The notes under the pieces are model-generated. The model was given only the letters and a program-made list of their open reading frames with translations, searched no databases and had not been told where the DNA came from. Of a stretch of DNA of 64,000 nt, positions 2,285-43,673 are shown piece after piece (positions within the stretch are counted from its first letter, which is position 1; every line of letters starts with the position of its first letter). The DNA lies in IMG/VR virus record IMGVR_UViG_3300032245_001746, positions 124,001-188,000 of that record; one strand, given 5' to 3'. The translations under genes were made by a program, and so were the position numbers.

Positions 2285-2296
2285 ATTTATTCTCCC

Positions 2297-2503: not shown

Positions 2504-2504
2504 T

Positions 2505-5266: not shown

Positions 5267-5506
5267 ATGCAAAAATTATCTGAAGAAAATAAAAAAATTA
5301 TTTTTCAATCAATTGTTGAATTGAAAAAAGTTTTAAATCAAAATCATTCTAAAATAAATAAAAAATCAAGAGGTGGAGCACAAGTTGGTTGTATTTGTGG
5401 AAATTCACAAACTTGTGTACCTTGTAGTGGTTTAGCATTTATTAAATCTGCTATCGTTTATAACGATAAAGAAATGCTTGAATTTATTGGAAAAACTTGT
5501 TTATGA
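5267..5506 (+). CDS. Small Cys-rich hypothetical protein
   Basis: CICG..CVPC cluster. Confidence 0.55.
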   Translation: MQKLSEENKKIIFQSIVELKKVLNQNHSKINKKSRGGAQVGCICGNSQTCVPCSGLAFIKSAIVYNDKEMLEFIGKTCL

Positions 5507-12546: not shown

Positions 12547-12846
12547 ATGTTAACATTTAATAAAGTTTTAGAAAAAATTGATGAATCTCATTCTAATAAT
12601 TCTGAAGAATTTAATGATAAAGCAATTGCTACCATTAAAACTGGATTAAATTTGGATGAAGATTTTTGGGATAATTTTAAAAATATATGTAATTCGCCTG
12701 GTTTGGGAGAGTTATTGGGAGTGAGTAAAAACGTAATTTCAACATGGTATTCCAAAATAGATAAACATCTAAATAAAGTTGAAGAAATGGAATTAAATTC
12801 TTCTAAAAGAAATAAAATGATAAAAACTGGATACGAAGATGAATAA
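12547..12846 (+). CDS. Small protein with leader and possible HTH
   Basis: MLTFNKVLE..IDE; LGELLGVSKNVISTW. Confidence 0.65.
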   Translation: MLTFNKVLEKIDESHSNNSEEFNDKAIATIKTGLNLDEDFWDNFKNICNSPGLGELLGVSKNVISTWYSKIDKHLNKVEEMELNSSKRNKMIKTGYEDE

Positions 12847-13906
12847 AAATATTCAAACTGGACCTAAAATTGTTAAAGGGCTTTCTGTAGAACACATTAA
12901 TAAATTAAAGAATTTTAAAAACATGAAAGTTATAAATCAAAAAAATCAAAAAGTAGTTAAAAAACCATTAAAAACACAAGGGGTCACGCACCAATTTATA
13001 CCAAGACCAGACTCAAAATATCTTGTAAATCTAGCAGATAATGTTAAAAGAATTGAATTTCCAGAAAAAGGATCTTTTAATCCTGGATTGGTCAAGTTAC
13101 CAAACAGTAAAGATTACATTATGGTTTACAGACCAGATGAATATGGTTTTGTGGGATGTAAGTTGGATGAAAACTTAAATCCATATTCTGATTCATATTT
13201 CAAATTCAATGTAACAAATTGTGCAGATCCAAGAATAATATGGACTAATGATAATAAATTATTAATGGTTTATTCATCAACTACTGGAGTTGGATTAAAT
13301 TTAGAGTGCATTAGAGGCTCTATAATAATGGACTTAAATAAATCTGATTCTTTTATTAACACTGAACATTTTAGAATATCTCCTGAAGAATTAAACAGTA
13401 GACAAAAAAATTGGATACCTTTTTTGTTTAATGAAGAAATTTATTTAATCGCTTCAATATGTCCGCATATAATCTATAAATTTGATTTAGCTACTAAAAA
13501 ATGTACTAAAATATCTGAAGAGAAATGGTTTCATCCCTGGATTTATCCAGAACTCTTTTTAAGAGGAAACACGAATCCAGTTTTAATGGAAGATGGAAAT
13601 TTTTTATCAACTTTTCATACAGCAACTTGGTATGGAAAAACATGTTATTATGATAATGGTTGTTATGTCTTTGAAGGAAAGTTTCCTTTTAAGATACTTA
13701 GATGTTCCAATAGAACATATCTTCCTGCAGAAGGTGCTATAGAACCGCATTTTAGAAATTTGGGAAGAATTGCATGTACATTTCCTGTAGGAATGGTCTT
13801 GGAAAATAATGATTTATTAATCTCTTATGGAGATAATGATTCTGTTGTAAAAATAATGAGGGTTGATTTAAATAAGATGTTATCTTTAACTTTGGATATA
13901 TTTTAA
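12839..13906 (+). CDS. Beta-propeller glycosidase/phosphorylase (GH130-like)
   Basis: FNPG, ADPR, QKNWIPF, ISYGDND motifs. Confidence 0.65.
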   Translation: MNKNIQTGPKIVKGLSVEHINKLKNFKNMKVINQKNQKVVKKPLKTQGVTHQFIPRPDSKYLVNLADNVKRIEFPEKGSFNPGLVKLPNSKDYIMVYRPDEYGFVGCKLDENLNPYSDSYFKFNVTNCADPRIIWTNDNKLLMVYSSTTGVGLNLECIRGSIIMDLNKSDSFINTEHFRISPEELNSRQKNWIPFLFNEEIYLIASICPHIIYKFDLATKKCTKISEEKWFHPWIYPELFLRGNTNPVLMEDGNFLSTFHTATWYGKTCYYDNGCYVFEGKFPFKILRCSNRTYLPAEGAIEPHFRNLGRIACTFPVGMVLENNDLLISYGDNDSVVKIMRVDLNKMLSLTLDIF

Positions 13907-13908
13907 AA

Positions 13909-14883
13909 ATGATTACAATTACAATTCACACTGCATCTTTGGATAATTTTTTAATTTCTCAAGGAATACCAAGTTATTTTCAAGCCGTTGTAGATAATTT
14001 ATCACGTCAAACTTTTAAAAATTTTGAACTTGTATATATTGATACTTATTATGATGAAAATAAAGATAATTTTAGTCAAATTAAATCAAATTTTATAATT
14101 AAACATGTTCCAATACACAAAAATCACAGATACTGGTTTGATAAAGGACACGTTTATATTTCTGCTGCTAAAAATACAGGTATCATTTATGCAGACGGAG
14201 AGTTGATAATTTCATTTGATGATGGGGAATTCTTTCCAGAAACACTTTTATCAAATTATTGGGATCATTATAAAAATGGACATTTGATGCACGCATATCA
14301 TCATAGAATGAAATCTATAGATACCATTAATGGATTAGTTAAACATCCTGTTAATGGTGATATTTATATCAATGATAGTAGAAAATTTAATGCAGACTCT
14401 TGTTTTCACAGAAATGGTACATGGACATATGCAGGAACAAGTTTTTCTTTAGAGGATGCTTTAATATTAAATGGTTTTAATGAAAGATTAGATGGATATA
14501 AAAGTTTAGAAGATTGTGATTTTGGTCTAAGATTGGTGATGTTAAATAAAAAGTTTGTTATTGATAAGAAACTTGGATTTATCTACATTGTAGATCATCC
14601 TAGTTATGTTGATCAAAATAAAAAACAAATAAATGAATTTATAGCCATTGAAAATCATGGTTTATTAATGTGTGCAAAAGAATTATTTGAAATTGAAGCA
14701 AATAAATATCCTATTACAGATAAGCATTTAGAAATAATTAAAAGAGAAACGATTAAATACAGAAATTTCGATCCTTTAAGTAAAGGAAATGAAGATAAGT
14801 TAAAAGTTTGGTTAAAAACACCAACTTTTAATCTAAAACAGGAACGAGAAGAAATTAGAAAATCAAAAGATTGGAAATGGTAA
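13909..14883 (+). CDS. Glycosyltransferase (GT2-like)
   Basis: QTFKNFELVYID, SAAKNTG, FDD, NGFNE..G...ED.DFG.RL. Confidence 0.8.
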   Translation: MITITIHTASLDNFLISQGIPSYFQAVVDNLSRQTFKNFELVYIDTYYDENKDNFSQIKSNFIIKHVPIHKNHRYWFDKGHVYISAAKNTGIIYADGELIISFDDGEFFPETLLSNYWDHYKNGHLMHAYHHRMKSIDTINGLVKHPVNGDIYINDSRKFNADSCFHRNGTWTYAGTSFSLEDALILNGFNERLDGYKSLEDCDFGLRLVMLNKKFVIDKKLGFIYIVDHPSYVDQNKKQINEFIAIENHGLLMCAKELFEIEANKYPITDKHLEIIKRETIKYRNFDPLSKGNEDKLKVWLKTPTFNLKQEREEIRKSKDWKW

Positions 14884-14885
14884 TT

Positions 14886-15506
14886 ATGTCAACTTTAAAT
14901 AAAATACAACAAATATTGCCAACTATTCATGGTTGGTGTACTTTTGAAAAAGCATCAAAATTTTACAATTTTATTATAGAAGAAAAGCCAAATATATGTG
15001 TTGAAATAGGAGTTTTTGGTGGCTCATCTTTAATTCCTCAAGCTATAGCTTTAAAGGAAAATGGATCTGGTACAATTTTTGGCATTGATCCTTGGTCAAC
15101 AGATGCTGCTTTAGAATGCATGATTGATGAAGATAATAAAAAATGGTGGGGGCAATTAGATTTAGAAGATATTTATAAACATTGTCAAAATAACGTTAAC
15201 AAATATGAGCTTCAAAATTATTGCACACTGATTAAAGATAAAGCTGAAAATGCAGTTACAAGATTTGCAGACGAATCAATTGATTTGCTTCATATTGATG
15301 GAAACCATTCAGAAGATTTATCATATAAGGATGCTGTTTTATACTTACCTAAAGTAAAATCTGGTGGTTACATATTTTTTGATGATATTTATTGGACTGA
15401 AGGAGATAATCATGCAACCACAAGAAAAGCAATAGGATATTTACTTAAATCTTGTGATAAAGTAGAAGTTGTAAACAATGATTGTTTAATATTAAAAAAG
15501 AATTAA
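14886..15506 (+). CDS. Class I SAM methyltransferase (Methyltransf_24-like)
   Basis: VEIGVFGGSS, GIDPW, DLLHIDGNH, GGYIFFDD. Confidence 0.85.
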   Translation: MSTLNKIQQILPTIHGWCTFEKASKFYNFIIEEKPNICVEIGVFGGSSLIPQAIALKENGSGTIFGIDPWSTDAALECMIDEDNKKWWGQLDLEDIYKHCQNNVNKYELQNYCTLIKDKAENAVTRFADESIDLLHIDGNHSEDLSYKDAVLYLPKVKSGGYIFFDDIYWTEGDNHATTRKAIGYLLKSCDKVEVVNNDCLILKKN

Positions 15507-15510
15507 AAAC

Positions 15511-15870
15511 ATGAAAACATTTAAAGAATGGATGTTTAATGAAAATTTAAGTTTAATTCAAAGTTTTGCTCAACAAAATAATGTAGAATTAGATATTTAT
15601 GAATCATTTGATGACACAATAAAAATTTCAAGAATTTTTGTTCCTAAAGAATTGAGAAAACAAGGCTTGGGCACTAAAGTTCTCGAATTTGTTTGTAATT
15701 TTGCTGATTCTAATAATAAAATTATTTTATTGTCGCCATCAATTGATTTTGGTGCAACCTCGTTAAACAGATTATATTCTTTTTATTCAAAATTTGGATT
15801 TATTAAAAATAAAGGTAGAAAAAAGAATTATAAATACAGTGAAACTATGATTCGTTATCCAAATCGTTAA
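15511..15870 (+). CDS. GNAT acetyltransferase with leader
   Basis: VPKELRKQGLGT acetyl-CoA motif, FYSKFGF; leader MKTFKEWMFNE. Confidence 0.85.
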   Translation: MKTFKEWMFNENLSLIQSFAQQNNVELDIYESFDDTIKISRIFVPKELRKQGLGTKVLEFVCNFADSNNKIILLSPSIDFGATSLNRLYSFYSKFGFIKNKGRKKNYKYSETMIRYPNR

Positions 15871-15952
15871 ATTAAGAAAGTTTAAAGAACTGGATGGGTA
15901 GTTTTTCCTAAACCTAATTAATAAAAATATATTTGAATTAAATATATAAGTA

Positions 15953-16243
15953 ATGGAATATGTTTCACAAGGAATTTTAAATCTTAAATCTAGTGCTTCT
16001 TATTGTTTTTCAATAAAAAGGTTCTTTAAATATTCCATTAATGATTTTGTGTTTATTAAAGAAAAAGCTAAAATTGGCGTTTTAGATAGAGTATGTATTA
16101 AAAAATATTTTACTAATTTAGAATTAAATAAATATAAAGATACATTTAATAGAATTTGGTTTGAAGAAGAGTTAATTCCACATCAAGAAGCTATTAATTT
16201 ATCTATTGCGTTTTATGAAAGAAAAATTTTTGAAATTAATTAA
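15953..16243 (+). CDS. Hypothetical protein
   Basis: 96-aa ORF. Confidence 0.6.
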   Translation: MEYVSQGILNLKSSASYCFSIKRFFKYSINDFVFIKEKAKIGVLDRVCIKKYFTNLELNKYKDTFNRIWFEEELIPHQEAINLSIAFYERKIFEIN

Positions 16244-16247
16244 TAAC

Positions 16248-16619
16248 TTATTTATTAACAGGCATAATTTTCTTTAACTTATTAAGTTTAAAAATCATAT
16301 CACTATAATGTTTATATTTTTTAATTTCTTCATCTGTTAATCCACACTCAGAGTCATCAACAAATTCATTTGTACTTATAAAAGTATTTACATTTTTCAA
16401 TTTGTTTAATGATTGATAATAATCATCAAGAAGTTTTAATTTATCATCTTTAGTGCATTGGCTCGAAACATTAACAAAATGTCCATCTATATTTTTGATA
16501 TAATCGCCAGTTATTATAAAACAACCAGAAGAAATATATGTAAAAATATATTTTTTTATAAAATAATGATTTCCAAAATATTTAGATTTAAAATATGAAG
16601 ATTGAAAATGCATAATCAC
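16248..16619 (-). CDS. Hypothetical protein
   Basis: 123-aa ORF co-oriented with 16623..17069. Confidence 0.55.
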   Translation of the reverse strand: MIMHFQSSYFKSKYFGNHYFIKKYIFTYISSGCFIITGDYIKNIDGHFVNVSSQCTKDDKLKLLDDYYQSLNKLKNVNTFISTNEFVDDSECGLTDEEIKKYKHYSDMIFKLNKLKKIMPVNK

Positions 16620-16622
16620 CTT

Positions 16623-17069
16623 TTATAAATTAATATCAACAGCTATTCTTTCTCCTAAAGGAGTAGTGTCGGATTCAACCCTTGTAATAGATGGATTATT
16701 TATTGCTTTAAATCTTACAATATTGCCATCTATAGCAACCTCGCCTGCTAAAATTGATGCAATGATTTTAAGAGTGTCTTTTATGGATAAATTCCCTTCT
16801 ATTTCAATGTTATCAAGACCATTAGGCGATAATTGAGAAAGATTTACAGAAGTAAATGCTAAAACTTCATCATTTGAAGAATCGATAAATTTTATGCAAC
16901 CTTCAAAATCATTATTTAAATTATAATTCCATATATAAAATCCGCTTCCAATTTCTGTAAATCCTGTTGTAATCACAGAATCAACATTGTTTCCATCAAT
17001 ATCTGTTTTCTGAGCATTTAGGGTAATACCAGTTTTGCCTTTTCCTAAAGATAAAGAAAATACAGACAT
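16623..17069 (-). CDS. Probable virion structural protein
   Basis: C-terminal L..I.S.LAG...F......RV....G.R motif seen in phage structural proteins; AAGG RBS. Confidence 0.5.
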   Translation of the reverse strand: MSVFSLSLGKGKTGITLNAQKTDIDGNNVDSVITTGFTEIGSGFYIWNYNLNNDFEGCIKFIDSSNDEVLAFTSVNLSQLSPNGLDNIEIEGNLSIKDTLKIIASILAGEVAIDGNIVRFKAINNPSITRVESDTTPLGERIAVDINL

Positions 17070-17142
17070 TAAAATATTCCTTAATAAAAATTAATATATA
17101 CTATATAGTTATTTACATTAAATTTTAATTTGAAACTAAAAT

Positions 17143-20100
17143 ATGAATCAAGTATTTAGGGTGGTAACAAGATTACAAGATTTAGATGATTTTTATGGAT
17201 CATTAACTGATGATCAGTATTTATCATTTGATTCTTCGTTAGATAAATTTACATTAAAATCCTTCAATTTTATTCCAATAAGTGGTTATAACAATCCTAT
17301 TTCGCTAGGAAATTTGGGAGATTCTAATTCTGTTGATCCCTTACTCACAATATCCAGAACTATTTCATCTGGATCAACAAATGCTCATGCTTTTTCAGAT
17401 TCTTCAAATTTTATTCGTAATGGTTATGCCTATAATTCTTTTGATGCTAGAATTAATGCTGGATTTAGTGGTCATACATACGATCATTATGCAGCATTTC
17501 AATCTTTGCCAAATATAAATAATGGATCATGGTCTGATGTTTATGGATTTTATTCCTCAGCTACAGTAAATGGCAACATTACAAGATTCAATCATGCTTG
17601 GGTTGATGATTGTATTGGAACTGGAAGTATTACTACACAATATGGTTATTATTGTGCTTCATTAGCAAAAGCTACAAATAATTGGGCTTTTTATTCTGCT
17701 GGCAGTACGCCAAGTAGAATTGGGGAGCTATCTGTTGGTGATAAATTTTGGATTACTCCAACTAATACTTCTGTTGAAATTGGATATAATATACGTTATA
17801 AAAATGGAGATTGGTATCCTACAGAAACAAGTTCTTATTATTGTTTATTAGAACCTCATTATCCAAGCACAAATTCATTTGCTATATTTACTGGTACAAC
17901 ACCATCAGATGCAAACGCTCCAATTTCTGATTGGCATGTTAGTTTAAGATGTGCAAATGATTCTACAGCAATAGGACCATCTGGTCCATTTATATTTGGT
18001 ACTATATCTAATATGGTTCAAATTGGTGGAGTGTCATCATCATTCCCAGCAATTAAACGTAACGGCGCAGCAATTAATTTCAGAGTTGCTAACGACTCAG
18101 CAGATGCAGATATTACATCTAAAGGTCTTACAGCAAGTGGTCCTATATTATCTACTAACACATATACGTCTGCTACAAATTTTGAACAGCTTAGAATACG
18201 CTCTAATAGCACTCAATATGAAGTCAGTTCTATTGTTGGTTCTGCTGGTGGTAGCCCTAGACCTATTCAGATTGGACATACTAATGCTGCAGGAATTTTT
18301 AGTTCTGCTTTGAGTATTGCTATTGATGGTGGAGTTTTGGCTAGTGGCACTGTATCATCTGTCGGTTCCGTAGCGACAAGGTTCACCGCCGAACGAACAG
18401 CAACAGCAAACGCTCTAATCGAATTAAAGACATCTGCCGGTTCGATTTTTGTTGGTCAAGGTGCGTCCGGTATCTTCGGAGTCAGTAATGCACCAGATCT
18501 GACAGCCGCAGCGTTTAAAGTGACAACTTCAACAGGTGATGTGTCTGCCGGAGCTATCACAGCGAGCGGTAAAATAACTACCGGAACCTCAACCACATCC
18601 CAACAGGGACTGTTGACAAATCGAATTGACCCTATCGATCAGGGCGGAGTGCTGATAGGTTTTGGCAGCGGAAGTATCGGGACGATGATCGTTAATCAGT
18701 TCAATGTGGTATACCAGTCCACGACGCGGAAAGTTTTCTCCAGCACCACGAATTTGAATTCAACTGCTGACCTGTCCTACGGTCGGGACTCTGCGGGAGT
18801 GTTCGGGATTTATACGACTGCGGCGGGGTCAACAAAGGCGGCGTTGACTTGCGGGGCGATCACCGCATCATCTTTCAACTGGGTTCAAGCAGACTCTAGC
18901 GGGGGAAGAAACCGACTTATTGCGGGTGCGGCGAGTGGTATCGACATTCAAGCAAACGAAAACACGAATCCTTTATTTCGCATTACGTATGCTGGTACAG
19001 AATATCCTTTATCTATTACGCGAGCAGCAATTACTGCTAATGTGCCGATATTAGTTACAAATGTATATACATCTACGACGAATTTTGAACAACTTAGAAT
19101 TAGATCTAATAGCACGCAATACGAAATTAGCTCTATTATAGGGTCTGCTGGTGGTAGTAATCGCGATATAGTAATTGGTCATGTTGATGCTGCTGGTACA
19201 ATGACTGCCGCATTAACTGGTGTAACTATTTATGCTAGTGGACTTGTTGAATCCAGACGAGTGTATTTGTGGGAATCATTTCAAGGGCATTATTCGTTTG
19301 GGCGAAATGCGATTCTTGGTGCATCAAGTGCCGCAGGAGTTGTAGGTGGTGATTTTGGTATTACTGCAGCTACTAACGCTGCTGGCACAGTTGATACACG
19401 ACTTAGAAGACTTGGTAGCGGATCGCTTGGTCTTATTAGTGGGGATGCGAATTCTACGACATATGGAAGTTTTACTGCTGGAGCGATCACTGCTAATGGC
19501 TTAATAACAACCTCTGGGTCTGCTAACACTTACAGTGTAACATTACCAAACACTGTTGGTATTGCTGCTAGAAATTCAGGAAATACGGCGTGGAATCGCA
19601 TTCTCAACTACACTGCTGCGAATCAATGTGCCGTTGGCGATTTTGACGGCGGTGGCGGCGGCTTAGGGTTGTATGGATCTGGGGCTAATTTATGGACAAT
19701 CTCATCAGCCGGTCATCTAGCAGCAAGTGGCGCATTTAATATAACAACTACTGGCACTGTCACGGCACCAGTAGTTTCGTTCCCAAATACGACGACACCG
19801 GCATTCCCAGCTAGTGGCATTATAGCCTTCTGTCCGGGGTCTTCAGACCTATGGTTTCGATCTGCGTACGGAAGTAGTTACATCCAAATCGGCGGGGGCA
19901 GCACCACCACATTTGCATCTGCCGGAAATATGACGGTCTCTGGTGCTGGTGGGGTACGCCTGCAAAGCAATCCATTGTCGTCTGGACCGACAGTTTTTGC
20001 AAAAGTGCCATCAACAACAGCAATCAACTTCCGCAATAATGCAGATTCAGCGGACATCGATTTAACTGCGGGTGCGATCACAGTGAGTGGTCCTATACTT

Positions 20101-22128
20101 TCTACAAATCTTTATGTATCATCAACTAATTTTGAACGATTAAGTATAAAGTCAAATAGTACACAGTATGAAATAAGCTCTATAGTAGGTTCTGTTGGCG
20201 GAAGTAATAGAGCTATTCATATTGGACACACTAATGCTGCTGGAGCGTTTACTTCGACATTAACAGTTGCAACTAATGGAAATATTAGTGTCAATGTCGA
20301 TTCTGCTTCGTTCACATTTGGAAAAGTTGGTACTAATAGTTTAGTAGGACAAAATGGCGATCTTTCTGTATTGTCTGGAGGAAATAGAATTCTTTTATTA
20401 GGAGATAATGGAAGTGGGTTAGCATTAGCTAGTTCAGTTGGAATTAATTGGTCTTCCTCAACTTCAGATGCTTATTCTCCTATTGATTATAGATTGCGTA
20501 GAAATGCTGCTGGCCAACTTGATGCTAGGGGTGATGGTGGATTACGAATTCGTAATTTGGCAAACTCAGCAGATGCTCCATTAACCGTTGGCGCAATCAC
20601 GGCGAGTGGCGACATTACTTCAACAGGATTCAAAAGTGGAAATGGCGGGTTATTTTTTCCTGCTGGATATACTGTATTAAGAGATTATTCTGGAAATAAT
20701 GTTTTTGGGGTTAACGCTACAGCGAATATACCTGTATGTTCAACAAATGGATATGGGATAGGAGTCAATTATTATACTCCAGATGTTATCTTAACAAGAG
20801 ATAATGCAAATATTCTTGCTTTACGTAATACGACTAATGCACAAACATTAAGACTATATAATACATATACTTCATCTACTAACAATGAATTTTTACAAAT
20901 CAGAGCAGTAGCTGGAGCTAATTTTGAAATAGGACCACAAAATAGATCTATTGGCGGATCGCTTAGAGGATTAACTATTGGAGGATATGTTGCAGGTAGT
21001 AACACAATTACTCCTTGGATGAAATTTGAAGATGGATATAATTACTCTCATCAGCATTTAAATATGCAAGATAAAAGTATCTTCAATGTTTATCGCCTTG
21101 AAAATTCATCTCAAATGCTTATTAATAGCCCAGAAGTATTTTTCGAAACATCAAATATTAGATTCAAAAATAATTGTTTAAGAACAGATGCAACTTCATC
21201 AGATCCATTCATCTTATATATGGTTGGAAAAACTTATGATGAAAGTGATGATGAATTTATTTCAATTAAAACTGCGTCAACTAGTGATTTTGAGTTTGGA
21301 GTTGGTCACAATAGTGTTGGGTCTTCTGTACAAAGAGGGCTTATAATTGGTAGTTATGATTCCACAATTAATGATACAATTAATCCTTGGCTTAAATTTT
21401 CTACTACTGGTTCTGCTGAATTTTTTGATGCATCAGAATCAATAGTTAAAATAAGTTCTGGCGGTTTGTGTATACAATCAAATCAACTTTTAAAAATGTA
21501 TGATAATGTTGAAAATTCTTATATGTACATAACAGCATTAGACAATACGTTTTATATAAGAAATTTTGATAATGATAAAAATATAGATTTAGAAGCTAAA
21601 GAATTACGTGCTGGGTCAATTTGTACTTATAACACACTCACGCCAATGCCTATAGGGAATTTAACCGAAATCACCAGATTTTATGTTGATGGTGGAATAT
21701 CTGAATTTAATGGTGGAACTGCATTAAACGAAATTAAACATGCTAGAATTTGTCCTCCGACATATTCTAACAGCGTTTCATCTACAATAACTTCTGCTTC
21801 TTCTTTATGTATAGATGGACCGCCAATAGCGGGCACTAATGTGTCAATAACTAATAGTTATGCATTAAAAATTGAATCTGGAAATATATGCTTTTTTAAT
21901 GGTGTTAATATAGTTACAGATATAACTGTTGGTACAAAAATTGGAACAAGTTCTACTCAAAAATTAGGATTTTGGAATGCAACTCCAGTTACACAACCAA
22001 CTACATCGGTTGCTGCTGCAACTCGTGTTGGTAATGCTGGAACTACAATTACAACAGCCGATACTTTTGACGGATACACTATAGCCCAAGTAATTAAAGC
22101 TCTTAGATCTGTTGGGGTTTTAGCTTAA
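17143..22128 (+). CDS. Long tail fibre / receptor-binding protein
   Basis: 1661 aa, Gly/Ser/Thr/Ala-rich, internal repeats, C-terminal KLGFWNATPV..QP..AL..G fibre tip motif. Confidence 0.85.
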   Translation: MNQVFRVVTRLQDLDDFYGSLTDDQYLSFDSSLDKFTLKSFNFIPISGYNNPISLGNLGDSNSVDPLLTISRTISSGSTNAHAFSDSSNFIRNGYAYNSFDARINAGFSGHTYDHYAAFQSLPNINNGSWSDVYGFYSSATVNGNITRFNHAWVDDCIGTGSITTQYGYYCASLAKATNNWAFYSAGSTPSRIGELSVGDKFWITPTNTSVEIGYNIRYKNGDWYPTETSSYYCLLEPHYPSTNSFAIFTGTTPSDANAPISDWHVSLRCANDSTAIGPSGPFIFGTISNMVQIGGVSSSFPAIKRNGAAINFRVANDSADADITSKGLTASGPILSTNTYTSATNFEQLRIRSNSTQYEVSSIVGSAGGSPRPIQIGHTNAAGIFSSALSIAIDGGVLASGTVSSVGSVATRFTAERTATANALIELKTSAGSIFVGQGASGIFGVSNAPDLTAAAFKVTTSTGDVSAGAITASGKITTGTSTTSQQGLLTNRIDPIDQGGVLIGFGSGSIGTMIVNQFNVVYQSTTRKVFSSTTNLNSTADLSYGRDSAGVFGIYTTAAGSTKAALTCGAITASSFNWVQADSSGGRNRLIAGAASGIDIQANENTNPLFRITYAGTEYPLSITRAAITANVPILVTNVYTSTTNFEQLRIRSNSTQYEISSIIGSAGGSNRDIVIGHVDAAGTMTAALTGVTIYASGLVESRRVYLWESFQGHYSFGRNAILGASSAAGVVGGDFGITAATNAAGTVDTRLRRLGSGSLGLISGDANSTTYGSFTAGAITANGLITTSGSANTYSVTLPNTVGIAARNSGNTAWNRILNYTAANQCAVGDFDGGGGGLGLYGSGANLWTISSAGHLAASGAFNITTTGTVTAPVVSFPNTTTPAFPASGIIAFCPGSSDLWFRSAYGSSYIQIGGGSTTTFASAGNMTVSGAGGVRLQSNPLSSGPTVFAKVPSTTAINFRNNADSADIDLTAGAITVSGPILSTNLYVSSTNFERLSIKSNSTQYEISSIVGSVGGSNRAIHIGHTNAAGAFTSTLTVATNGNISVNVDSASFTFGKVGTNSLVGQNGDLSVLSGGNRILLLGDNGSGLALASSVGINWSSSTSDAYSPIDYRLRRNAAGQLDARGDGGLRIRNLANSADAPLTVGAITASGDITSTGFKSGNGGLFFPAGYTVLRDYSGNNVFGVNATANIPVCSTNGYGIGVNYYTPDVILTRDNANILALRNTTNAQTLRLYNTYTSSTNNEFLQIRAVAGANFEIGPQNRSIGGSLRGLTIGGYVAGSNTITPWMKFEDGYNYSHQHLNMQDKSIFNVYRLENSSQMLINSPEVFFETSNIRFKNNCLRTDATSSDPFILYMVGKTYDESDDEFISIKTASTSDFEFGVGHNSVGSSVQRGLIIGSYDSTINDTINPWLKFSTTGSAEFFDASESIVKISSGGLCIQSNQLLKMYDNVENSYMYITALDNTFYIRNFDNDKNIDLEAKELRAGSICTYNTLTPMPIGNLTEITRFYVDGGISEFNGGTALNEIKHARICPPTYSNSVSSTITSASSLCIDGPPIAGTNVSITNSYALKIESGNICFFNGVNIVTDITVGTKIGTSSTQKLGFWNATPVTQPTTSVAAATRVGNAGTTITTADTFDGYTIAQVIKALRSVGVLA
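18138..20245 (+). repeat. Three ~52-codon internal repeats in tail fibre (~18138, ~19042, ~20088)
   Basis: PILxTNxYxSxTNFExLxIxSNSTQYExSSIxGSxGGSxRxIxIGH occurs three times. Confidence 0.85.
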
Positions 22129-22131
22129 AAC

Positions 22132-22169
22132 TATTTTTCAAAATTAAAATTATTTTTCAAAATTAAAAT
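22132..22169. repeat. 19-bp tandem duplication
   Basis: TATTTTTCAAAATTAAAAT twice, immediately after the fibre stop codon. Confidence 0.8.
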
Positions 22170-22216
22170 TTAAGCCAAACTATATTAATTACACTCTTTT
22201 ATATAAGGTAAATAAA

Positions 22217-22570
22217 ATGGCATTAAGTTTAAAAGAAAATGAAAAATTAACAATTCCTGCAACTCAAGAGAAAATATTAGATAAATTATGGATTAGACAA
22301 ATAATTATTCAAACACCATCTCCTCTCGTAGAAGGAAGTGTTAAGATGGAATATGGACCTTGGTCTGGAAATATGGCAGAAGATGCTGTCTGGAGAGATG
22401 TAGACGGTAATGATATTACTAAGTTTATCAGCATTAATAATTTATATTCAACTATGATAGAATGTCCAGAATTAAAATTTGCTTTTGATGCAATTTTATC
22501 TGCAATTTTGCCTTTACAGGCATTTTTAGACGCAAAAGAATCAGAAGTTGAAGAATCAGAAGTTGTTTAA
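22217..22570 (+). CDS. Hypothetical protein, possible fibre chaperone
   Basis: Immediately downstream of tail fibre; AAGG RBS. Confidence 0.6.
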   Translation: MALSLKENEKLTIPATQEKILDKLWIRQIIIQTPSPLVEGSVKMEYGPWSGNMAEDAVWRDVDGNDITKFISINNLYSTMIECPELKFAFDAILSAILPLQAFLDAKESEVEESEVV

Positions 22571-22610
22571 TTTGTAAAATTTTAAATATGTTAAAAAAGA
22601 AAGGTAAATT

Positions 22611-22799
22611 ATGGAATTATTAATTAATAAAGAAGAACAACAACAATTGTTGTCATGTCTTGATGTTGCAATTAAGTCTGCTCAAAATAGTCTTCAAACA
22701 GCAAGTGTTTTGTTGCCTTTGGCAAGTAAAATTAGTCTTTTGAAAGATGATGAAGAAGAAGAAAAAAAATCTGATGGTAAAAATCCTAGAAAAAAATAA
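22611..22799 (+). CDS. Small hypothetical protein
   Basis: AAGG RBS; 62 aa. Confidence 0.65.
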   Translation: MELLINKEEQQQLLSCLDVAIKSAQNSLQTASVLLPLASKISLLKDDEEEEKKSDGKNPRKK

Positions 22800-22818
22800 T
22801 CAAATTAATTAAAATATA

Positions 22819-22858
22819 AAAAACCCTAATAAAAACCCTAATTTTTATTAGGGTTTTT
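22819..22858. terminator. Intrinsic terminator
   Basis: AAAAACCCTAATAAAAA-N6-TTTTTATTAGGGTTTTT. Confidence 0.75.
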
Positions 22859-22903
22859 ATTTTTTAAAATGTTCTTAATATATAATTTAAAAGGAGACGA
22901 TAT

Positions 22904-23350
22904 ATGAAAGTAGAAGCATTAGAAGTAAATGAATTTGTTAATTCTTTAAGCTTGGAAGTTCCAGCACCTGTTGGAACCGTTGTAGTTAATAATTTAAGTA
23001 TTAATTCTGTTATGGATAGCTTAAAATTAAAATGGGATGAATTTAAGAAAACAGCAAAAGAAAATGGTACATTTTCATCACAATCTGCAGTTAAATTTCT
23101 ATTTTTATCTCTTGATGCTTTAATTTTAGTTGTTGAAAAATTAATTCCTGGTGAAAAGGGTTCAGATAAAAAAGCTACTGTTTTATTGGCTATAAGTGGT
23201 TTGTATGATTATGTGATTAAACAATTTATGCCAGTATGGTTGAAACCTTTTTCTGGATATATTAAAAACTTTTTCGTTACAGTAGTATGTTCTATAGCTA
23301 TAGATTGGATTGTATCAAAATATAATAAAGGTACATGGTCATTGTCTTAA
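22904..23350 (+). CDS. Putative membrane / holin-like protein
   Basis: Hydrophobic helices, G.DKK motif, strong AAGGAG RBS. Confidence 0.45.
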   Translation: MKVEALEVNEFVNSLSLEVPAPVGTVVVNNLSINSVMDSLKLKWDEFKKTAKENGTFSSQSAVKFLFLSLDALILVVEKLIPGEKGSDKKATVLLAISGLYDYVIKQFMPVWLKPFSGYIKNFFVTVVCSIAIDWIVSKYNKGTWSLS

Positions 23351-23382
23351 TTGAAATTTAATTCATGTTGAAAGGAGTCAAT

Positions 23383-24324
23383 ATGTCAAAAAAAATAAAA
23401 TTTAAATTACCAAAAGTAATAAGAGAAGATATTTTACAATTGTCTTCAACTCAACAAATTGGTTGGAGTATTTCAGCATTTGGGGTCCCAGATGTTTGGA
23501 AACACACACAAGGAGAAGGTGTTAAAATTGCAATTTTAGATTCTGGATGTGATTTAGACCATCCAGATTTGAAAGATAATTTGCTTACTGGTATAAATTT
23601 TATAAATTTAAACAAATCTCCTGAAGATGATAATGGTCATGGTTCTCATACAACTGGCATTATTGTTGCATCTAATAATGAAATTGGCATGATTGGTGTT
23701 GCACCTAGAGCTAAAGTTATTCCAGTAAAAGTTTTAGATTCTAAAGGTTCTGGAGATTTAGAACATGTAGTTAAAGGAATTCGTTGGGCTGTAGACAACG
23801 GAGTAGATATCATTTCAATGTCTTTAGGCTGTCCATTTCCTATACAAAATGTAAGAAAAGCCATTCAATATGCAGATAAAAATGGAATTCCTGTTTTTTG
23901 TGCTGCAGGAAATGCTGGTAAAACAAAAGAACTTTTTTATCCATCAAATTATCCAGAAACTATAGCTGTTGGTTCTATTGATGAAACTTTAAGTAGATCA
24001 TCATTTTCCAACACTGGTGAGAATTTAGATTTCATGGCACCAGGTGGAAAAATATTTTCAACAATACCTGATAATTGGTATGGATATATGTCTGGAACAA
24101 GCATGGCATGTCCTTTTGTCGTCGGTCTGTCTGCACTTTGTTTATCATATCAAAGAATTAAATATCCTGATAAAAAATTATCAGGATCAAAAGATTTTAT
24201 TAACTTATTGAAAAAACATGTTGTTAACACAATAGATGTTGATGCAAACAACAAACAATTTTATCAAGGTTATGGAATAATTGATGTGAAAGCTTTAAAA
24301 GAAGAATTTTTAAAAAATAATTGA
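23383..24324 (+). CDS. Subtilisin-like serine protease (S8)
   Basis: Catalytic triad ILDSG, GHGSH, SGTSMA.P; AAGN oxyanion motif; AAGGAG RBS supports the 23383 start. Confidence 0.95.
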   Translation: MSKKIKFKLPKVIREDILQLSSTQQIGWSISAFGVPDVWKHTQGEGVKIAILDSGCDLDHPDLKDNLLTGINFINLNKSPEDDNGHGSHTTGIIVASNNEIGMIGVAPRAKVIPVKVLDSKGSGDLEHVVKGIRWAVDNGVDIISMSLGCPFPIQNVRKAIQYADKNGIPVFCAAGNAGKTKELFYPSNYPETIAVGSIDETLSRSSFSNTGENLDFMAPGGKIFSTIPDNWYGYMSGTSMACPFVVGLSALCLSYQRIKYPDKKLSGSKDFINLLKKHVVNTIDVDANNKQFYQGYGIIDVKALKEEFLKNN

Positions 24325-24918
24325 TTCATATTCTTTTAAAATTTTAGAAATAACATTGTTTATTTGTTTGATTTCATCAGGGTCAGATGAGTCTTTTAAG
24401 TCTAATTTAAGTTTTCTTAAAGCAATAATATCTTTTTTTAAGTTAAACATTAAAGATTGTTTTTTTTGTATTTCTTTTTCGTTATTTTCTATATAATCAT
24501 TTTTTATATCTGATTTTAATTTATTTAAAAATAACTTCAAATCTCTTAAAGTTATTTTTTTTGTTTTTTTAAATTTAATTTTTGAAAAAATTTTATTAAA
24601 GAATTTTTTCAATTTAAATATCCAATTTTCTTCCTCTTTCAGATCTTCATCTTCTAGAGATAGAACATTTACATTGTCAACGTTGATAGGCTTTATCAAA
24701 ATAGGAATTTGATTGATTAAATTTTGTTTTTTTGCAATTTCTTCATCATTTTTCTTTAACATTTCATGCACTTCATCCTTTGTTTCAGGAGTAACTGCAT
24801 ATTCCAATGCACATAATTTACAACAATAAAATTGTTCTTCTTGTTTATTTATTATTTCTGTAATAGAACAATTTTTTAATTCATTACATGGTTTTTTTGT
24901 AAATGGACAATTTGACAT
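24310..24918 (-). CDS. Zn-finger / coiled-coil protein, possibly McsA-like
   Basis: N-terminal C..C..ITEII....CKLCA and C-terminal coiled coil. Confidence 0.4.
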   Translation of the reverse strand: MSNCPFTKKPCNELKNCSITEIINKQEEQFYCCKLCALEYAVTPETKDEVHEMLKKNDEEIAKKQNLINQIPILIKPINVDNVNVLSLEDEDLKEEENWIFKLKKFFNKIFSKIKFKKTKKITLRDLKLFLNKLKSDIKNDYIENNEKEIQKKQSLMFNLKKDIIALRKLKLDLKDSSDPDEIKQINNVISKILKEYESIIF

Positions 24919-24931
24919 TTTTTTCCTAATT

Positions 24932-25774
24932 TTAAGTGGTTGAAGGATTTGGACTGCCTAAAATTTTTAATTTAAAACCCTCACCAGCAACTGATTCAGA
25001 GCTTGGCGGGACGGTTCTTTTTATCCATAGAGGAAATCCTTCTTCTGGATATAAATTTCCAATTGAAATAGTTGTTAAATTACTAGTTTCAAAGAAATTA
25101 ACATTATATGGTATGGTTGTGTCTACATCTAGTAAAGTTGGAATTGAATTAATTGGAGAACCAATTGAAGATTTTGTTACAGATGCCGTAATTGCTCCAA
25201 TCAAATTTGTTTTATCAATATTAAATAAATCATGACTTCTTTTATCATCTAATCCATCAAAATTAATTTTAAATTGAATATTATTAATTCCTAAATTAAA
25301 ATTAACAGTTACATTTTCAAGACTTTCGATAGATCTTAAAGCAGTTTGTAAATTTTCTGTCCAAATAACAGGATTTAAATCAAAATTTACATTTCTGTAT
25401 TCAATTTCTGTTTTTCCTAAAGGTTTGTAAGATATGGTAAAATAACCATTCGATATAACTCCTGTAATTATTACATCTTGTATTTCTTTTTCTGATCTTA
25501 TTCCTAATTCAATTGTAGAAATTGTATTTGCAATATTTAATGTATATAATTGCAAATTATAAATTGTATCAACAGAGTTATTGTTAAATATATAAATACA
25601 TCTGTAGCTCGTAGAACCTACAGACGCTTCTTCTCTTGCAACATTATCAAATAAGTTATTTAATTGACCTGTCACAGGATATGATGAAGGATCACCACCA
25701 ATGGATAAATTTGGATTAGAATTACTAGAACCTCCAGTTAAAGTAACGACTAAATCTGTTGATTTTGCAGCCAT
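24932..25774 (-). CDS. Probable virion structural protein
   Basis: GG.SN..P..S.GG, NLFDNV..EA..G...YRCIY..N, LWIKRTVP motifs. Confidence 0.6.
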   Translation of the reverse strand: MAAKSTDLVVTLTGGSSNSNPNLSIGGDPSSYPVTGQLNNLFDNVAREEASVGSTSYRCIYIFNNNSVDTIYNLQLYTLNIANTISTIELGIRSEKEIQDVIITGVISNGYFTISYKPLGKTEIEYRNVNFDLNPVIWTENLQTALRSIESLENVTVNFNLGINNIQFKINFDGLDDKRSHDLFNIDKTNLIGAITASVTKSSIGSPINSIPTLLDVDTTIPYNVNFFETSNLTTISIGNLYPEEGFPLWIKRTVPPSSESVAGEGFKLKILGSPNPSTT

Positions 25775-34629: not shown

Positions 34630-34663
34630 TTGAGGTTCTCAATCTTTTTTTTTGGACTTACCA

Positions 34664-35980: not shown

Positions 35981-35989
35981 AGGAAAAAT

Positions 35990-36391: not shown

Positions 36392-36395
36392 AATC

Positions 36396-37446: not shown

Positions 37447-37470
37447 TTTGTTTTTATTAAAGGGTTTAAA

Positions 37471-38346: not shown

Positions 38347-38365
38347 TTTATAGAAAGGCATAGAA

Positions 38366-43666: not shown

Positions 43667-43673
43667 GTGAATC

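What the first reader, a model, noticed from the sequence alone, without database searches (positions are those of the whole stretch)
17143..22128. Mosaic tail fibre with GC-rich modules joined at recurring GAITA linkers
Seen: segments ~18360-18960 and ~19620-20090 are much more GC-rich than the AT-rich background (line 18781-18840 has 37/60 G+C). GAIT[AV] recurs at ~18549, 18853, 19479, 20070 and 20589, often near composition changes. Three ~52-aa repeats and repeated R...DSAD/NSAD motifs provide internal homology. Inference: receptor-binding modules were recently swapped in from higher-GC phages or prophages of the same host, using the linkers as crossover points.
Basis: partly seen in the sequence, partly recalled or inferred. 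Interest (0 to 1): 0.6.

Follow-up and report, generated by a model that had tools for sequence, protein, structure and literature searches.

The report
Mosaic tail fibre with imported GC-rich modules
A 1661-residue fibre gene of a very AT-rich giant phage is a patchwork of modules, several of which still carry the GC-rich codons of a foreign source. The modules meet at a short conserved motif, which makes this an unusually clean example of the known module-swapping evolution of phage tail fibres.

Summary
ORF 17143-22128 (+) encodes P0001, 1661 aa, in a 27.6% GC jumbo myovirus. It holds two third-codon-position GC islands: nt 18361-18966 (GC3 0.49) and nt 19585-20085 (GC3 0.43). The rest of the gene is at 0.13-0.19. 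Against the genome's own codon usage the islands score z = 16.6 and 12.0, so amino-acid composition does not explain them. They are the only long GC3 islands I found in a long ORF of the 320-kb record.

A second assembler reproduces the gene exactly. GAIT[AV] occurs 5 times, against 0.02 expected by shuffling. Three roughly 100-aa repeats are real but old.

Different pieces of the gene have different best relatives:
- AT-rich sister-phage fibre genes match the low-GC3 parts.
- Phage-like contigs of 48-55% GC match the island-2 core (68-70% aa).
- Island 1 has only weak relatives, and its core has none above about 49% over short stretches.

Six homology breakpoints fall at GAITxSG-type motifs. 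The composition edges do so clearly only once. A trimer model supports an intertwined fibre.

"Receptor-binding", "same host" and "recent" are not shown. This is a new variant of a known kind, of moderate interest.

The parts
17143..22128 (+). Whole ORF P0001 (1661 aa): putative modular, homotrimeric tail fibre of a jumbo myovirus
   Evidence: One open frame. No Pfam, PHROG or NCBIfam match. The window carries T4-type tail sheath and gp15 genes. The C-terminal 57 aa match an annotated cyanophage tail fiber. Trimer model ipSAE 0.89 against a best control of 0.00.
17143..18021 (+). N-terminal conserved part (aa 1-293), GC3 0.11; presumed attachment end
   Evidence: aa 54-391 are 83% identical in protein and DNA to P0002 of an AT-rich sister phage. 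aa 24-217 have 35-45% relatives on contigs of 35-62% GC. The attachment role is inferred.
18022..18348 (+). Repeat A1 (aa 294-402), ending in the degenerate junction motif GVLASG (aa 397-402, nt 18331-18348); GC3 0.17
   Evidence: Self-comparison. Homology with P0002 ends at about aa 392. A module shared with L002_up starts at about aa 405, where L002_up has GAITSTG.
18349..18570 (+). Module 1a (aa 403-476), GC3 0.35, ending in GAITASG (nt 18550-18570)
   Evidence: 72% aa identity to L002_up aa 1030-1103, whose copy is GC3-poor. Third positions differ 17 GC/AT against 8 AT/GC. The homology stops right after the motif.
18571..18873 (+). Module 1b (aa 477-577), core of island 1, GC3 0.57, ending in GAITASS (nt 18853-18873)
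   Evidence: Highest GC3 of the gene. Only weak relatives, 33-49%, on contigs of 43-56% GC. No close relative by word search, the viral-contig scan or the full HMMER search.
18874..19044 (+). Module 1c (aa 578-634), GC3 0.33, ending in AAITANV (nt 19024-19044)
   Evidence: Best local matches are P0022 and P0052; P0022 lies on a contig of about 47% GC. Homology to the A repeats of the relatives begins at aa 635.
19045..19254 (+). Repeat A2 core (aa 635-704), GC3 0.17
   Evidence: 74-77% DNA identity to repeats in L002, L003 and L004. Self-comparison.
19255..19500 (+). Module aa 705-786, GC3 0.22, ending in GAITANG (nt 19480-19500); looks like an older, largely AT-shifted import
   Evidence: 80% aa identity to P0009, which lies on a 57.7% GC contig. 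Third positions differ 22 AT/GC against 7 GC/AT. The homology stops just after the motif.
19501..19740 (+). Module aa 787-866, GC3 0.34, ending in a degenerate motif (aa 863-871)
   Evidence: The only relative is P0049, at about 44-47%. At the equivalent position the relatives of the next module carry GAITxSG.
19741..20091 (+). Island-2 core module (aa 867-983), GC3 0.43, ending in GAITVSG (nt 20071-20091)
   Evidence: 68-70% aa identity by BLAST to P0011, P0015 and P0016; 74% to P0011 by global alignment. These lie on contigs of 54%, 55% and 48% GC. 71.6% DNA identity to L005. Third positions are symmetric, 17 against 16. GC3 drops to zero for 19 codons right after the motif.
20092..20334 (+). 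Repeat A3 (aa 984-1064), GC3 0.14
20335..20610 (+). Module aa 1065-1156, GC3 0.17, ending in GAITASG (nt 20590-20610) with the DNA core ATCACGGCGAGTGG
   Evidence: 92% aa and 82% DNA identity to L002_up aa 631-722. That homology stops after the motif and P0003 homology begins at aa 1161. DNA core.
20611..21432 (+). Modules aa 1157-1430, including the degenerate repeats A4 and A5; GC3 0.13-0.15
   Evidence: 76% aa identity to P0003 aa 163-310 and 58% to P0003 aa 558-789.
21433..21702 (+). Orphan segment aa 1431-1520, GC3 0.18; candidate distal specificity region (inferred only)
   Evidence: No hit in the 30-aa tile search against the relatives collected. One weak 34% BLAST alignment, to P0021, spans it. 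It lay outside the aa 400-960 query of the big search.
21703..22125 (+). C-terminal part aa 1521-1661, with a conserved last ~85 aa (nt 21871-22125)
   Evidence: 55-60% identity to the C-termini of P0007 and P0067. The last 57 aa are 58.6% identical to the extreme C-terminus of a 271-aa annotated tail fiber protein of Cyanophage KBS-S-2A.

Best explanation
P0001 is a long, intertwined homotrimeric tail-fibre-type protein of an uncultured, very AT-rich (about 28% GC) jumbo or mega myovirus. It is built from about 15 sequence modules.

Many modules end in a conserved stretch of the type ...N-x-A-D-S-A-D-x-x-L-T-x-G-A-I-T-A-S-G. Three are followed by a conserved ~65-100-aa 'A' repeat.

The gene evolves by exchanging whole modules with the fibre genes of other phages, including phages of much higher GC (roughly 43-58%). 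The exchanges resolve at the GAITxSG motif. There are two likely reasons, and they may act together. Only joints in that structural register give a fibre that folds. The motif's DNA also offers a short shared sequence.

Imported modules arrive with GC-rich synonymous sites and are then eroded by the phage's strong AT mutation bias. The module GC3 values would therefore represent imports of different age or donor GC:
- 0.57: aa 477-577.
- 0.43: aa 867-983.
- 0.33-0.35: aa 403-476, 578-634 and 787-866.
- 0.22: aa 705-786.
- 0.11-0.18: the remaining modules.

**Shown:** the compositional islands, the mosaic of best relatives, the breakpoints at the motif, and the absence of an assembly artefact.
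**Supported by a model only:** the trimer.
**Inferred:** the virion role, the direction and timing of transfers, the recombination mechanism, and any effect on host range.
For: - **Composition.** GC3 islands at z 16.6 and 12.0 after correction for amino acids. HMM edges as reported. Unique among long ORFs of the 320-kb record.
- **Not a chimera.** One independent Logan contig of 18,566 bp at depth 32 spans 17000-22300 with 0 differences. The same protein sits on a 530,789-bp contig.
- **Mosaic.** DNA-level matches of 72-83% to three tandem fibre paralogues of an AT-rich sister phage cover aa 41-391, 979-1158 and 1161-1292. aa 873-983 match a 54% GC contig at 71.6%, and aa 668-783 match a 57.7% GC contig at 66%.
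- **Direction of bias at identical residues.** Island 2 against P0011: 17 and 16, symmetric. aa 705-786 against P0009: 22 and 7, AT-shifted. Module 1a against L002_up: 8 and 17.
- **Recurrent replacement.** The sister gene P0002 is 83% identical in DNA up to aa 391. It then drops to 20-50% aa identity yet is also GC3-rich (0.44-0.70) at the same place. The cassette was therefore replaced after the two lineages split.
- **Junctions.** Identity with L002_up, P0009, P0011, P0003 and P0002 starts or stops at aa 397-405, 470-478, 780-788, 977-983 and 1150-1160. Each of these is a GAITxSG-type motif. The island-2 module in P0011, P0015 and P0016 is flanked by the motif on both sides and followed by unrelated sequence.
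- **DNA core of the motif.** Conserved beyond what the amino acids require: ATC 15/20 against 4.6 expected, GCG 13 against 3.2, AGY 20/20 against 6.5. It occurs 3 times in the window with none expected.
- **Fibre identity.** Tail sheath and gp15 genes in the window. C-terminus shared with an annotated tail fiber. Module shared with P0015, which ends in K1-lyase_C. Homotrimer of aa 860-1160: ipSAE 0.89 against a best control of 0.00. The runs agree in at least 93% of contacts, and partner pLDDT is at least 89. In the tool's calibration this mark was reached by 20 of 30 solved pairs and 1 of 23 single chains. The monomer fold reached only pLDDT 62.8.
Against: - No donor is identified. The best relative of any island is 69-74% identical, and the core of island 1 is nearly an orphan.
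- Relatives on GC-rich contigs also exist for parts that are GC3-poor here: aa 642-810 and the N-terminal domain. Where a homologue lives therefore does not by itself prove the direction of transfer.
- Composition edges and strict GAIT motifs coincide clearly only once in four here, and rarely in the sister genes.
- One sister-phage gene (L004_g5) has GC3 islands and no GAIT motif.
- The motif instances used for the codon statistics are not independent, because many are paralogous repeats.
- No curated tail-fibre family matches, and no fold match is significant.
- The gene lies 13 kb from the sheath genes, with glycosylation genes in between.
Confidence: 0.75

Rival explanations
1. The GC-rich codons are kept by selection at the nucleotide or translation level, for example an mRNA structure or paced translation that helps the trimer fold. 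They would then not be a mark of foreign origin.
For: The sister gene P0002 is also GC3-rich at the equivalent position. Codons of the junction motif are conserved beyond what the amino acids require.
Against: - The same module type exists in a GC3-poor version: L002_up aa 1030-1103 is 72% identical to module 1a, with third positions shifted 17 to 8.
- The P0009-type module is GC3-poor here and GC3-rich in its 57.7% GC phage.
- The P0001 and P0002 islands are only 20-50% identical in protein although the flanks are 83% identical, so they are different cassettes.
- Island GC3 equals that of the GC-rich relatives.
Confidence: 0.07
2. The modules were captured from a bacterial chromosome, such as a host adhesin, a tailocin or a resident prophage, rather than from free phages.
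For: One module relative (42%) lies in a 1906-aa ORF on a 22.7-kb contig binned to a Pirellula MAG of about 50% GC. The contig carrying P0015 has an integrase-type domain, so that relative may be temperate.
Against: - A pattern scan of 185,579 species genomes gave only that one distant hit.
- None of about 400 further Planctomycetota genomes matched.
- Several of the other relatives lie on contigs with phage-type genes (portal, tail-like, BppU_N), though most neighbours have no PHROG match.
Confidence: 0.12
3. The islands are an assembly chimera that joins reads of a GC-rich phage into the AT-rich genome at shared repeats.
For: Metagenomic origin. The repeats and the shared motif could mislead an assembler.
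Against: - A second assembler gives one 18.6-kb contig at uniform depth 32 with 0 differences.
- The protein also sits on a 530,789-bp contig.
- The reading frame stays open through every junction.
- Sister genes from other samples show the same kind of island.
- All of the above come from one sample, and raw reads could not be inspected.
Confidence: 0.02
4. A targeted diversification system, such as a DGR-type retroelement, an invertible cassette or biased gene conversion from another locus, creates the deviant stretches.
For: Fibre genes are the classic targets of such systems.
Against: - No reverse transcriptase in the 320-kb record.
- No second copy of any part of the gene elsewhere in the record.
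- Only weak AT-rich inverted repeats nearby.
- A DGR changes adenines. It does not raise GC3 over 600 nt.
- The record is only 63% complete.
Confidence: 0.03

Closest known systems
T-even long tail fibre tip and adhesin locus (gp37/gp38), where short conserved glycine-rich motifs flank hypervariable segments
   Same: Short conserved motifs separate variable segments. Exchanges between phages resolve at those motifs without extended homology. [quoted passage not shown] 1998. Here six natural homology breakpoints sit on GAITxSG-type motifs.
   Different: - No sequence or profile similarity to gp37 or gp38.
- The exchanged units here are whole 60-170-aa modules along a 1661-aa trimeric protein, not loops of a small monomeric adhesin.
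- The partners differ in GC by 20-30 points, which leaves visible GC3 islands.
- No experiment shows recombination at the motif.
General mosaic tail-fibre and tailspike evolution by horizontal module exchange
   Same: A conserved N-terminal part, variable distal modules, and different relatives for different parts. Examples from the literature search: PMC10579305 (a host-recognition module shared among distant Alteromonas phage families) and PMC10408124 (tailspike modularity); I read their abstracts only. The P2/Mu/lambda side-fibre mosaics are cited from my own knowledge.
   Different: The variable part here is the middle of the protein, and at least five separate imported modules are visible in one gene. 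The family has no curated model.
Tail fiber protein of Cyanophage KBS-S-2A (NC_020854.1, CPKG_00003)
   Same: The last 57 residues are 58.6% identical and lie at the extreme C-terminus of both proteins.
   Different: The cyanophage protein has 271 aa and shares nothing else with P0001. Its function is an annotation, not a tested result.
Bdellovibrio chimeric fibres, T4 gp34, Mu and T5 fibres, Klebsiella phage Kp7 fibre gp51 (solved trimeric fibres)
   Same: They fill the top of the weak structural hit lists for the aa 860-1160 model. The homotrimer model is intertwined along nearly its whole length.
   Different: No match is significant: best Foldseek E-value 0.75, best VIA Z 3.7. These are leads only.

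Membership tests
Phage tail fibre (trimeric fibre of a contractile-tailed phage) | Encoded in a tailed-phage genome that has contractile-tail genes | tested here: met
   The virus record is 319,857 bp. Phage_sheath_1 and T4-gp15_tss lie at window 2-3428, and a head-tail adaptor PHROG at 7127-8005.
Phage tail fibre (trimeric fibre of a contractile-tailed phage) | Match to a curated tail-fibre family (Pfam, PHROGs, NCBIfam) | tested here: not met
   No family for the whole protein or for seven segments.
Phage tail fibre (trimeric fibre of a contractile-tailed phage) | Sequence homology to proteins annotated or known as tail fibres | tested here: met
   The C-terminal 57 aa are 58.6% identical to the KBS-S-2A tail fiber. 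A module is shared with P0015, which carries K1-lyase_C. The matches are local only.
Phage tail fibre (trimeric fibre of a contractile-tailed phage) | Intertwined homotrimer rich in beta structure | tested here: inconclusive
   Three copies of aa 860-1160 give ipSAE 0.89 against a best control of 0.00. The runs agree in at least 93% of contacts, and partner pLDDT is at least 89. In the tool's calibration the mark was reached by 20 of 30 solved pairs and 1 of 23 single chains. This is a model, not a measurement. The monomer models have pLDDT 58-63 and are all-beta.
Phage tail fibre (trimeric fibre of a contractile-tailed phage) | Present in the virion and binds a host surface receptor | not testable with these tools
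   The phage is uncultured and its host is unknown.
Motif-mediated module exchange (T-even gp37/gp38 paradigm) | Short conserved motifs flank variable segments | tested here: met
   Five GAIT[AV] copies plus degenerate copies, against 0.02 expected. The motif is shared by many relatives.
Motif-mediated module exchange (T-even gp37/gp38 paradigm) | Natural homology breakpoints lie at the motifs | tested here: met
   Six junctions. The breakpoints were read from alignments after the fact, not found by a blind breakpoint test.
Motif-mediated module exchange (T-even gp37/gp38 paradigm) | Crossovers at the motif can be produced experimentally and change host range | not testable with these tools
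   This needs a culturable phage-host pair.
Diversity-generating retroelement target | Reverse transcriptase and a template repeat near-identical to the variable region | tested here: not met
   No PF00078 match in the record. No second copy of any gene segment. The record is 63% complete.
Invertible tail-fibre cassette (Gin/Cin/Min type) | Inverted crossover sites that flank alternative fibre ends, plus an invertase | tested here: not met
   Only weak AT-rich inverted repeats at 15500-25000. No fibre-like ORF on the opposite strand.

The most novel reading that the evidence does not exclude
The roughly 14-nt DNA core of the junction motif (ATCAC[G/A]GCGAG[T/C]GG) may itself be maintained as a portable recombination linker. 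It keeps GC-rich codons even in AT-rich phages and is shared by fibre genes of phages from 28% to about 58% GC. As a dedicated crossover site, used by microhomology or by a phage recombinase or nuclease, it would let unrelated phages trade fibre modules in frame across very large compositional, and perhaps host, distances.
Probability: 0.15. Interest if true: 0.7.

Novelty: new variant of a known kind. Interest (0 to 1): 0.45.

Why it matters
Tail-fibre mosaicism is textbook knowledge, but the imported pieces can rarely be seen so directly. In a 28% GC genome the synonymous sites of foreign modules stand out at z 12-17, with one edge sharp to the codon. One gene therefore displays what looks like a series of imports of different age or donor GC.

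The finding has four uses:
- It defines an uncharacterised, widely spread fibre-module family, found on contigs of 28-62% GC and with no curated model. Its junction motif is simple and could guide the annotation of receptor-binding proteins in metagenomic phages.
- It shows that a giant AT-rich phage exchanges fibre parts with much GC-richer phages. Either their hosts overlap despite a 20-30 point GC gap, or fibre modules travel between host ranges. CRISPR-spacer or Hi-C host assignment can test this directly.
- The conserved DNA core at the junction gives a concrete hypothesis for how in-frame module exchange is achieved.
- The junction motif suggests natural splice points for chimeric fibres in ordinary laboratory phage-host work.

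Tried and rejected
- **Amino-acid composition as the cause.** Rejected by GC3 against expectation.
- **Close relatives of island 1.** No close relative in the IMG/VR scan or the word search of aa 400-600. Only 33-49% partial hits in the full HMMER search.
- **GenBank phages.** No DNA match. The only protein match is the C-terminal 57 aa.
- **N-terminal domain in IMG/VR.** Nothing. The metagenome scan gave four distant relatives.
- **Planctomycetota host or donor lead.** It rested on the Pirellula MAG hit and the DUF1501 gene in the window. None of about 400 further genomes matched, so I dropped it.
- **PHROG scan of the neighbours of the GC-rich relatives.** Mostly unknown functions. Only L011 gave tail-like hits.
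- **Structure.**
  - The AF2 monomer of aa 860-1160 reached pLDDT 62.8 and that of aa 395-640 reached 58.2.
  - Foldseek against the PDB gave a best E-value of 0.75.
  - VIA wide gave a best Z of 3.7.
  - The PDB sequence search gave one hit at E 0.07.
  - No fold assignment is possible, so I cannot say whether the islands are shaft or binding domains.
- **ESM Atlas.** Scores of 0.86-0.88, mostly (5 of the 6 rows shown) viral hypothetical clusters, some with Mtd_N or T4_gp9_10_N. These are leads only.
- **DGR.** No reverse transcriptase and no template repeat.
- **Invertible cassette.** No convincing inverted repeats.
- **Reads.** Only one run holds the gene, probably the source. It is kept as contigs, so variants in module number or order could not be examined.
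- **Composition edges against strict GAIT motifs.** A simple test in P0001, P0002 and L002_up found 2 of 10 edges within 13 aa. The motif marks homology breakpoints much better than it marks composition edges.
- **Literature.** A search for the literal string GAITASG found 0 papers.
Full report
**Setting**

The window is bases 124001-188000 of a 319,857-bp IMG/VR virus record that CheckV rates 63% complete. The same protein also occurs on a 530,789-bp contig.

The window is 27.6% G+C. It carries a T4-type tail sheath (2-2284, minus strand), a gp15-type sheath stabiliser (2505-3428) and a head-tail adaptor (7127-8005). The closest cultured phages match only 23-39% over part of the sheath. This is an uncultured jumbo or mega myovirus that reads well under table 11.

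The finding is one ORF, 17143-22128 on the plus strand. It encodes P0001, 1661 aa, rich in Gly, Ala, Ser and Thr. It has no Pfam, PHROG or NCBIfam match, whole or in pieces.

Yes, in nearly every detail.
It does not.
- Third-position GC is 0.06-0.2 over most of the gene. It rises to 0.50-0.66 at aa 476-575 and to 0.36-0.48 at aa 801-950.
- I computed the expected number of GC-ending codons for the actual residues from the codon usage of all other long ORFs of the record. By that measure aa 407-608 scores z 16.6 and aa 815-981 scores z 12.0. The three remaining segments score -0.6, 2.9 and 0.7.
- A two-state HMM puts the islands at nt 18361-18966 and 19585-20085.
- Among 3142 fifty-codon windows of the record (mean 0.152, sd 0.073), no other long ORF has an extended island.
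- GAIT[AV] occurs five times at the stated places, against 0.02 expected.
- The three DSAD/NSAD motifs and three repeats are there. The repeats are about 100 aa long, 65-69% identical in protein and 71-78% in DNA, with two further degenerate copies.

**Is it an artefact?**

Only one public run holds the sequence, and it is probably the source. Logan's independent assembly of that run gives a single 18,566-bp contig at depth 32. It covers 17000-22300 without a single difference.

The frame stays open through every junction. Sister genes from other samples show the same kind of island. A chimera is very unlikely.

**What the pieces are related to**

The word search found seven relatives. Three of them map to one AT-rich sister phage (loci L002, L003, L004). 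That phage has three tandem fibre paralogues: L002_up (at least 1655 aa), P0002 (1330 aa) and P0003 (1020 aa).

Family scans and the word search left the GC-rich parts unexplained. I therefore ran the full HMMER search with aa 400-960, which gave 78 hits. Mapping every hit back onto P0001 gives a clear mosaic:

| Residues | Best relative | Identity | GC3 here | Note |
|---|---|---|---|---|
| 41-391 | P0002 | 83% DNA | 0.11-0.17 | AT-rich sister phage |
| 403-476 | L002_up 1030-1103 | 72% aa | 0.35 | sister copy is GC3-poor |
| 477-577 | none close | 33-49% aa, short stretches | 0.57 | relatives on contigs of 43-56% GC |
| 635-704 | A repeats of the sister phage | 74-77% DNA | 0.17 | repeat A2 |
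| 705-786 | P0009 | 80% aa | 0.22 | P0009 contig is 57.7% GC |
| 867-983 | P0011, P0015, P0016 | 68-70% aa (BLAST), 74% to P0011 (global), 71.6% DNA | 0.43 | contigs of 54%, 55% and 48% GC |
| 979-1158 | L002_up | 79% DNA; aa 1111-1140 identical | 0.14-0.17 | AT-rich sister phage |
| 1161-1292 | P0003 | 80% DNA | 0.13 | AT-rich sister phage |
| 1431-1520 | nothing in the tile search; one weak 34% hit | - | 0.18 | lay outside the aa 400-960 query of the big search |
| last 57-85 | a C-terminal element shared by several fibres | 55-60% aa | 0.11 | includes the annotated tail fiber of Cyanophage KBS-S-2A |

The KBS-S-2A match is.

**Foreign origin of the islands**

Three results bear on this.
1. 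At residues identical between P0001 and its relative, third positions differ symmetrically for the island-2 core against P0011 (17 AT/GC, 16 GC/AT). The island still has the composition of a GC-rich genome. The P0009-like module is strongly AT-shifted (22 against 7). Module 1a is GC-richer than its copy in the AT-rich sister phage (17 against 8).
2. P0002 is 83% identical to P0001 up to aa 391 and then falls to 20-50% protein identity. Yet P0002 is also GC3-rich (0.44-0.70) at the same place. With flanks this similar, the cassettes must have been replaced after the lineages split, and at least one of them came from a GC-rich pool.
3. The same module type exists in GC3-poor and GC3-rich versions. 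That argues against an intrinsic need for GC-rich codons.

Module by module, GC3 reads 0.11, 0.17, 0.35, 0.57, 0.33, 0.17, 0.22, 0.34, 0.43, 0.14, 0.17, 0.13, 0.15, 0.18, 0.11. I read this as imports of different age or donor GC that are being eroded by the phage's AT bias. That is an inference.

One caveat is important. Relatives on GC-rich contigs also exist for parts that are GC3-poor here, including the N-terminal domain (35-45% identity on contigs of 35-62% GC). The module pool as a whole spans phages of all compositions. Where a homologue lives does not by itself give the direction of transfer.

**The GAITA 'linkers'**

Simple proximity of composition edges to strict motifs is weak. Only the right edge of island 2 is exact. 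There GC3 falls from island level to zero for 19 codons immediately after GAITVSG.

Homology breakpoints tell a stronger story. In ungapped displays:
- Identity with L002_up runs up to GAITASG (aa 470-476) and then vanishes.
- Identity with P0009 runs up to GAITANGLI (aa 780-788) and vanishes.
- Identity with P0011 runs up to GAITVSGP (aa 977-984). Identity with P0003 and L002_up begins at SGPIL.
- Identity with L002_up runs up to GAITASG-D-IT (aa 1150-1159). P0003 takes over at aa 1161.
- The P0002-to-L002_up switch at aa 392-405 lies on a degenerate copy (GVLASG) where L002_up has GAITSTG.

In an alignment of the island-2 module from P0001, P0011, P0015 and P0016, the module is bounded by the motif on both sides. 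P0001 has a degenerate copy at the left edge. The sequences after the right-hand motif are unrelated to one another.

These breakpoints were read from alignments after the fact. A blind breakpoint test is listed among the next steps.

**DNA level and mechanism**

I examined twenty G[AS]IT[AST]SG instances in eight genes of phages with GC3 from 0.20 to 0.58. Their codons are far more uniform than the amino acids require:
- Ile ATC 15/20, against 4.6 expected.
- Thr ACG 11, against 4.0.
- Ala GCG 13 of 15, against 3.2.
- Ser AGY 20/20, against 6.5.

The resulting core, ATCAC[G/A]GCGAG[T/C]GG, occurs three times in the window with none expected. The instances are partly paralogous, so the statistics overstate independence.

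A shared core of 14-15 nt could serve as microhomology. The ~200-nt A repeats that follow three of the motifs (71-80% DNA identity between phages) offer longer homology.

In the homotrimer model the motif residues lie inside the contact zone of all three chains. An equally good reason for the pattern is that only joints in this structural register give a fibre that folds. I cannot separate these two causes.

**Is it a tail fibre?**

For this reading:
- The phage context.
- The C-terminal element shared with an annotated tail fiber.
- A module shared with a 380-aa protein that ends in a K1-lyase_C domain on a contig with an integrase-type domain.
- Relatives that lie next to portal, BppU_N-like and tail-like genes.
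- The homotrimer prediction for aa 860-1160. Its ipSAE is 0.89 against a best control of 0.00. The runs agree in at least 93% of contacts, and partner pLDDT is at least 89. In the tool's calibration the mark was reached by 20 of 30 solved pairs and 1 of 23 single chains, and the counts hold only roughly here. The monomer fold reached only pLDDT 62.8. That rise on trimerisation is typical of intertwined fibres.

Against this reading, or still open:
- No curated family matches.
- No structural match is significant.
- The gene lies 13 kb from the sheath genes, behind a small glycosylation cluster.

I call it a tail-fibre-type protein with good but not complete support. Whether the GC-rich modules bind a receptor is unknown. 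They lie in the middle of the protein and could not be folded with confidence.

**Rivals**

- Selection for GC-rich codons is disfavoured for the reasons given above.
- Capture from a bacterial chromosome cannot be excluded. One 42% relative lies in a Pirellula MAG. However, a scan of one genome per species found nothing closer, and about 400 further Planctomycetota genomes had no match.
- DGR or invertible-cassette mechanisms find no support.

**Comparison with what is known**

The nearest paradigm is the T-even distal fibre and adhesin locus. There, crossovers within small conserved glycine-rich motifs swap hypervariable segments and host range (PMC3157838, citing Tetart et al. 1998). The present case works like that in outline, but it is not a member of that protein family.

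It differs in several ways:
- The size of the exchanged units.
- The number of separate imports visible in one gene.
- The very large compositional distance between the exchange partners.
- The conserved DNA core at the joint.

The literal motif string is not found in the searchable literature.

**Verdict**

It is unproven on receptor binding, shared host and recency.

This is a new variant of a well-known kind of system. It is of moderate interest, mainly as an unusually legible example and for the junction motif.

Noticed in passing
window 18556-18569, 20077-20090, 20596-20609; also loci L002, L005, L009, L011, L013: The DNA that encodes the GAITASG junction motif keeps a near-constant core, ATCAC[G/A]GCGAG[T/C]GG, in fibre genes of phages with very different GC. 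It uses ATC, ACG and GCG codons that are rare in the AT-rich phage (Ile ATC is 6% genome-wide).
   Followed up: partly
window 12839-15870: A small glycosylation-type cluster sits just upstream of the fibre gene on the same strand: GH130-like, GT2 glycosyltransferase, Methyltransf_24 and a GNAT acetyltransferase. Whether it modifies the fibre or the host surface is unknown.
   Followed up: no
window 23365-24324: A subtilase (Peptidase_S8, E 1.7e-57; PHROG 'protease') lies 1.2 kb downstream of the fibre gene. Three small ORFs without family matches (22217-23350) lie between them. They are possible fibre maturation or assembly factors, but this was not tested.
   Followed up: no
window 34652-45392: A run of unusual auxiliary genes for a phage: an RNA ligase with a PHA02142 OB domain, a Thg1-type tRNA-His guanylyltransferase, a glutamine-dependent NAD synthase (CN_hydrolase plus NAD_synthase, 710 aa) and a protein kinase domain protein.
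   Followed up: no
window 60303-61583 (minus strand): A full-length DUF1501 protein (E 8e-112) is encoded in the phage. As far as I know this family is expanded in Planctomycetota. It was tried as a host hint, but the fibre-module search in about 400 Planctomycetota genomes found nothing further.
   Followed up: partly
window 5497-7137: One ORF combines DUF7487 with a Mom-like (DNA-modification) GNAT domain. This is a possible sign of modified DNA in this phage.
   Followed up: no
G000 258000-290000 (outside the window): Many small ORFs (100-220 aa) with GC3 of 0.4-0.7 lie among scattered tRNA genes. The record has 20 tRNAs, 13 of them in an array at 82.6-84.8 kb. These may be spurious frames over RNA genes or further foreign DNA.
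   Followed up: no
L002 1-4969 and L004 6916-8897: The fibre paralogues of the AT-rich sister phage also have GC3 islands: L002_up aa 457-548 and 706-805, and L004_g5 with three islands. L004_g5 has no GAIT motif. Islands of this kind are therefore a recurrent feature of the fibre genes in this phage group.
   Followed up: partly
L022 (P0016, ENA ERZ724552) against L002, L003, L004 (ERZ724544, ERZ724528, ERZ724522): A 48% GC contig that carries the island-2 module comes from the same numbered series of ENA assemblies as the AT-rich sister phage. This hints that GC-rich and AT-rich carriers of the module share a habitat. Sample metadata were not available.
   Followed up: no
window 22796-22881: A 40-nt imperfect hairpin with a 6-nt loop lies right after the small ORF 22611-22799. 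It looks like a terminator.
   Followed up: no
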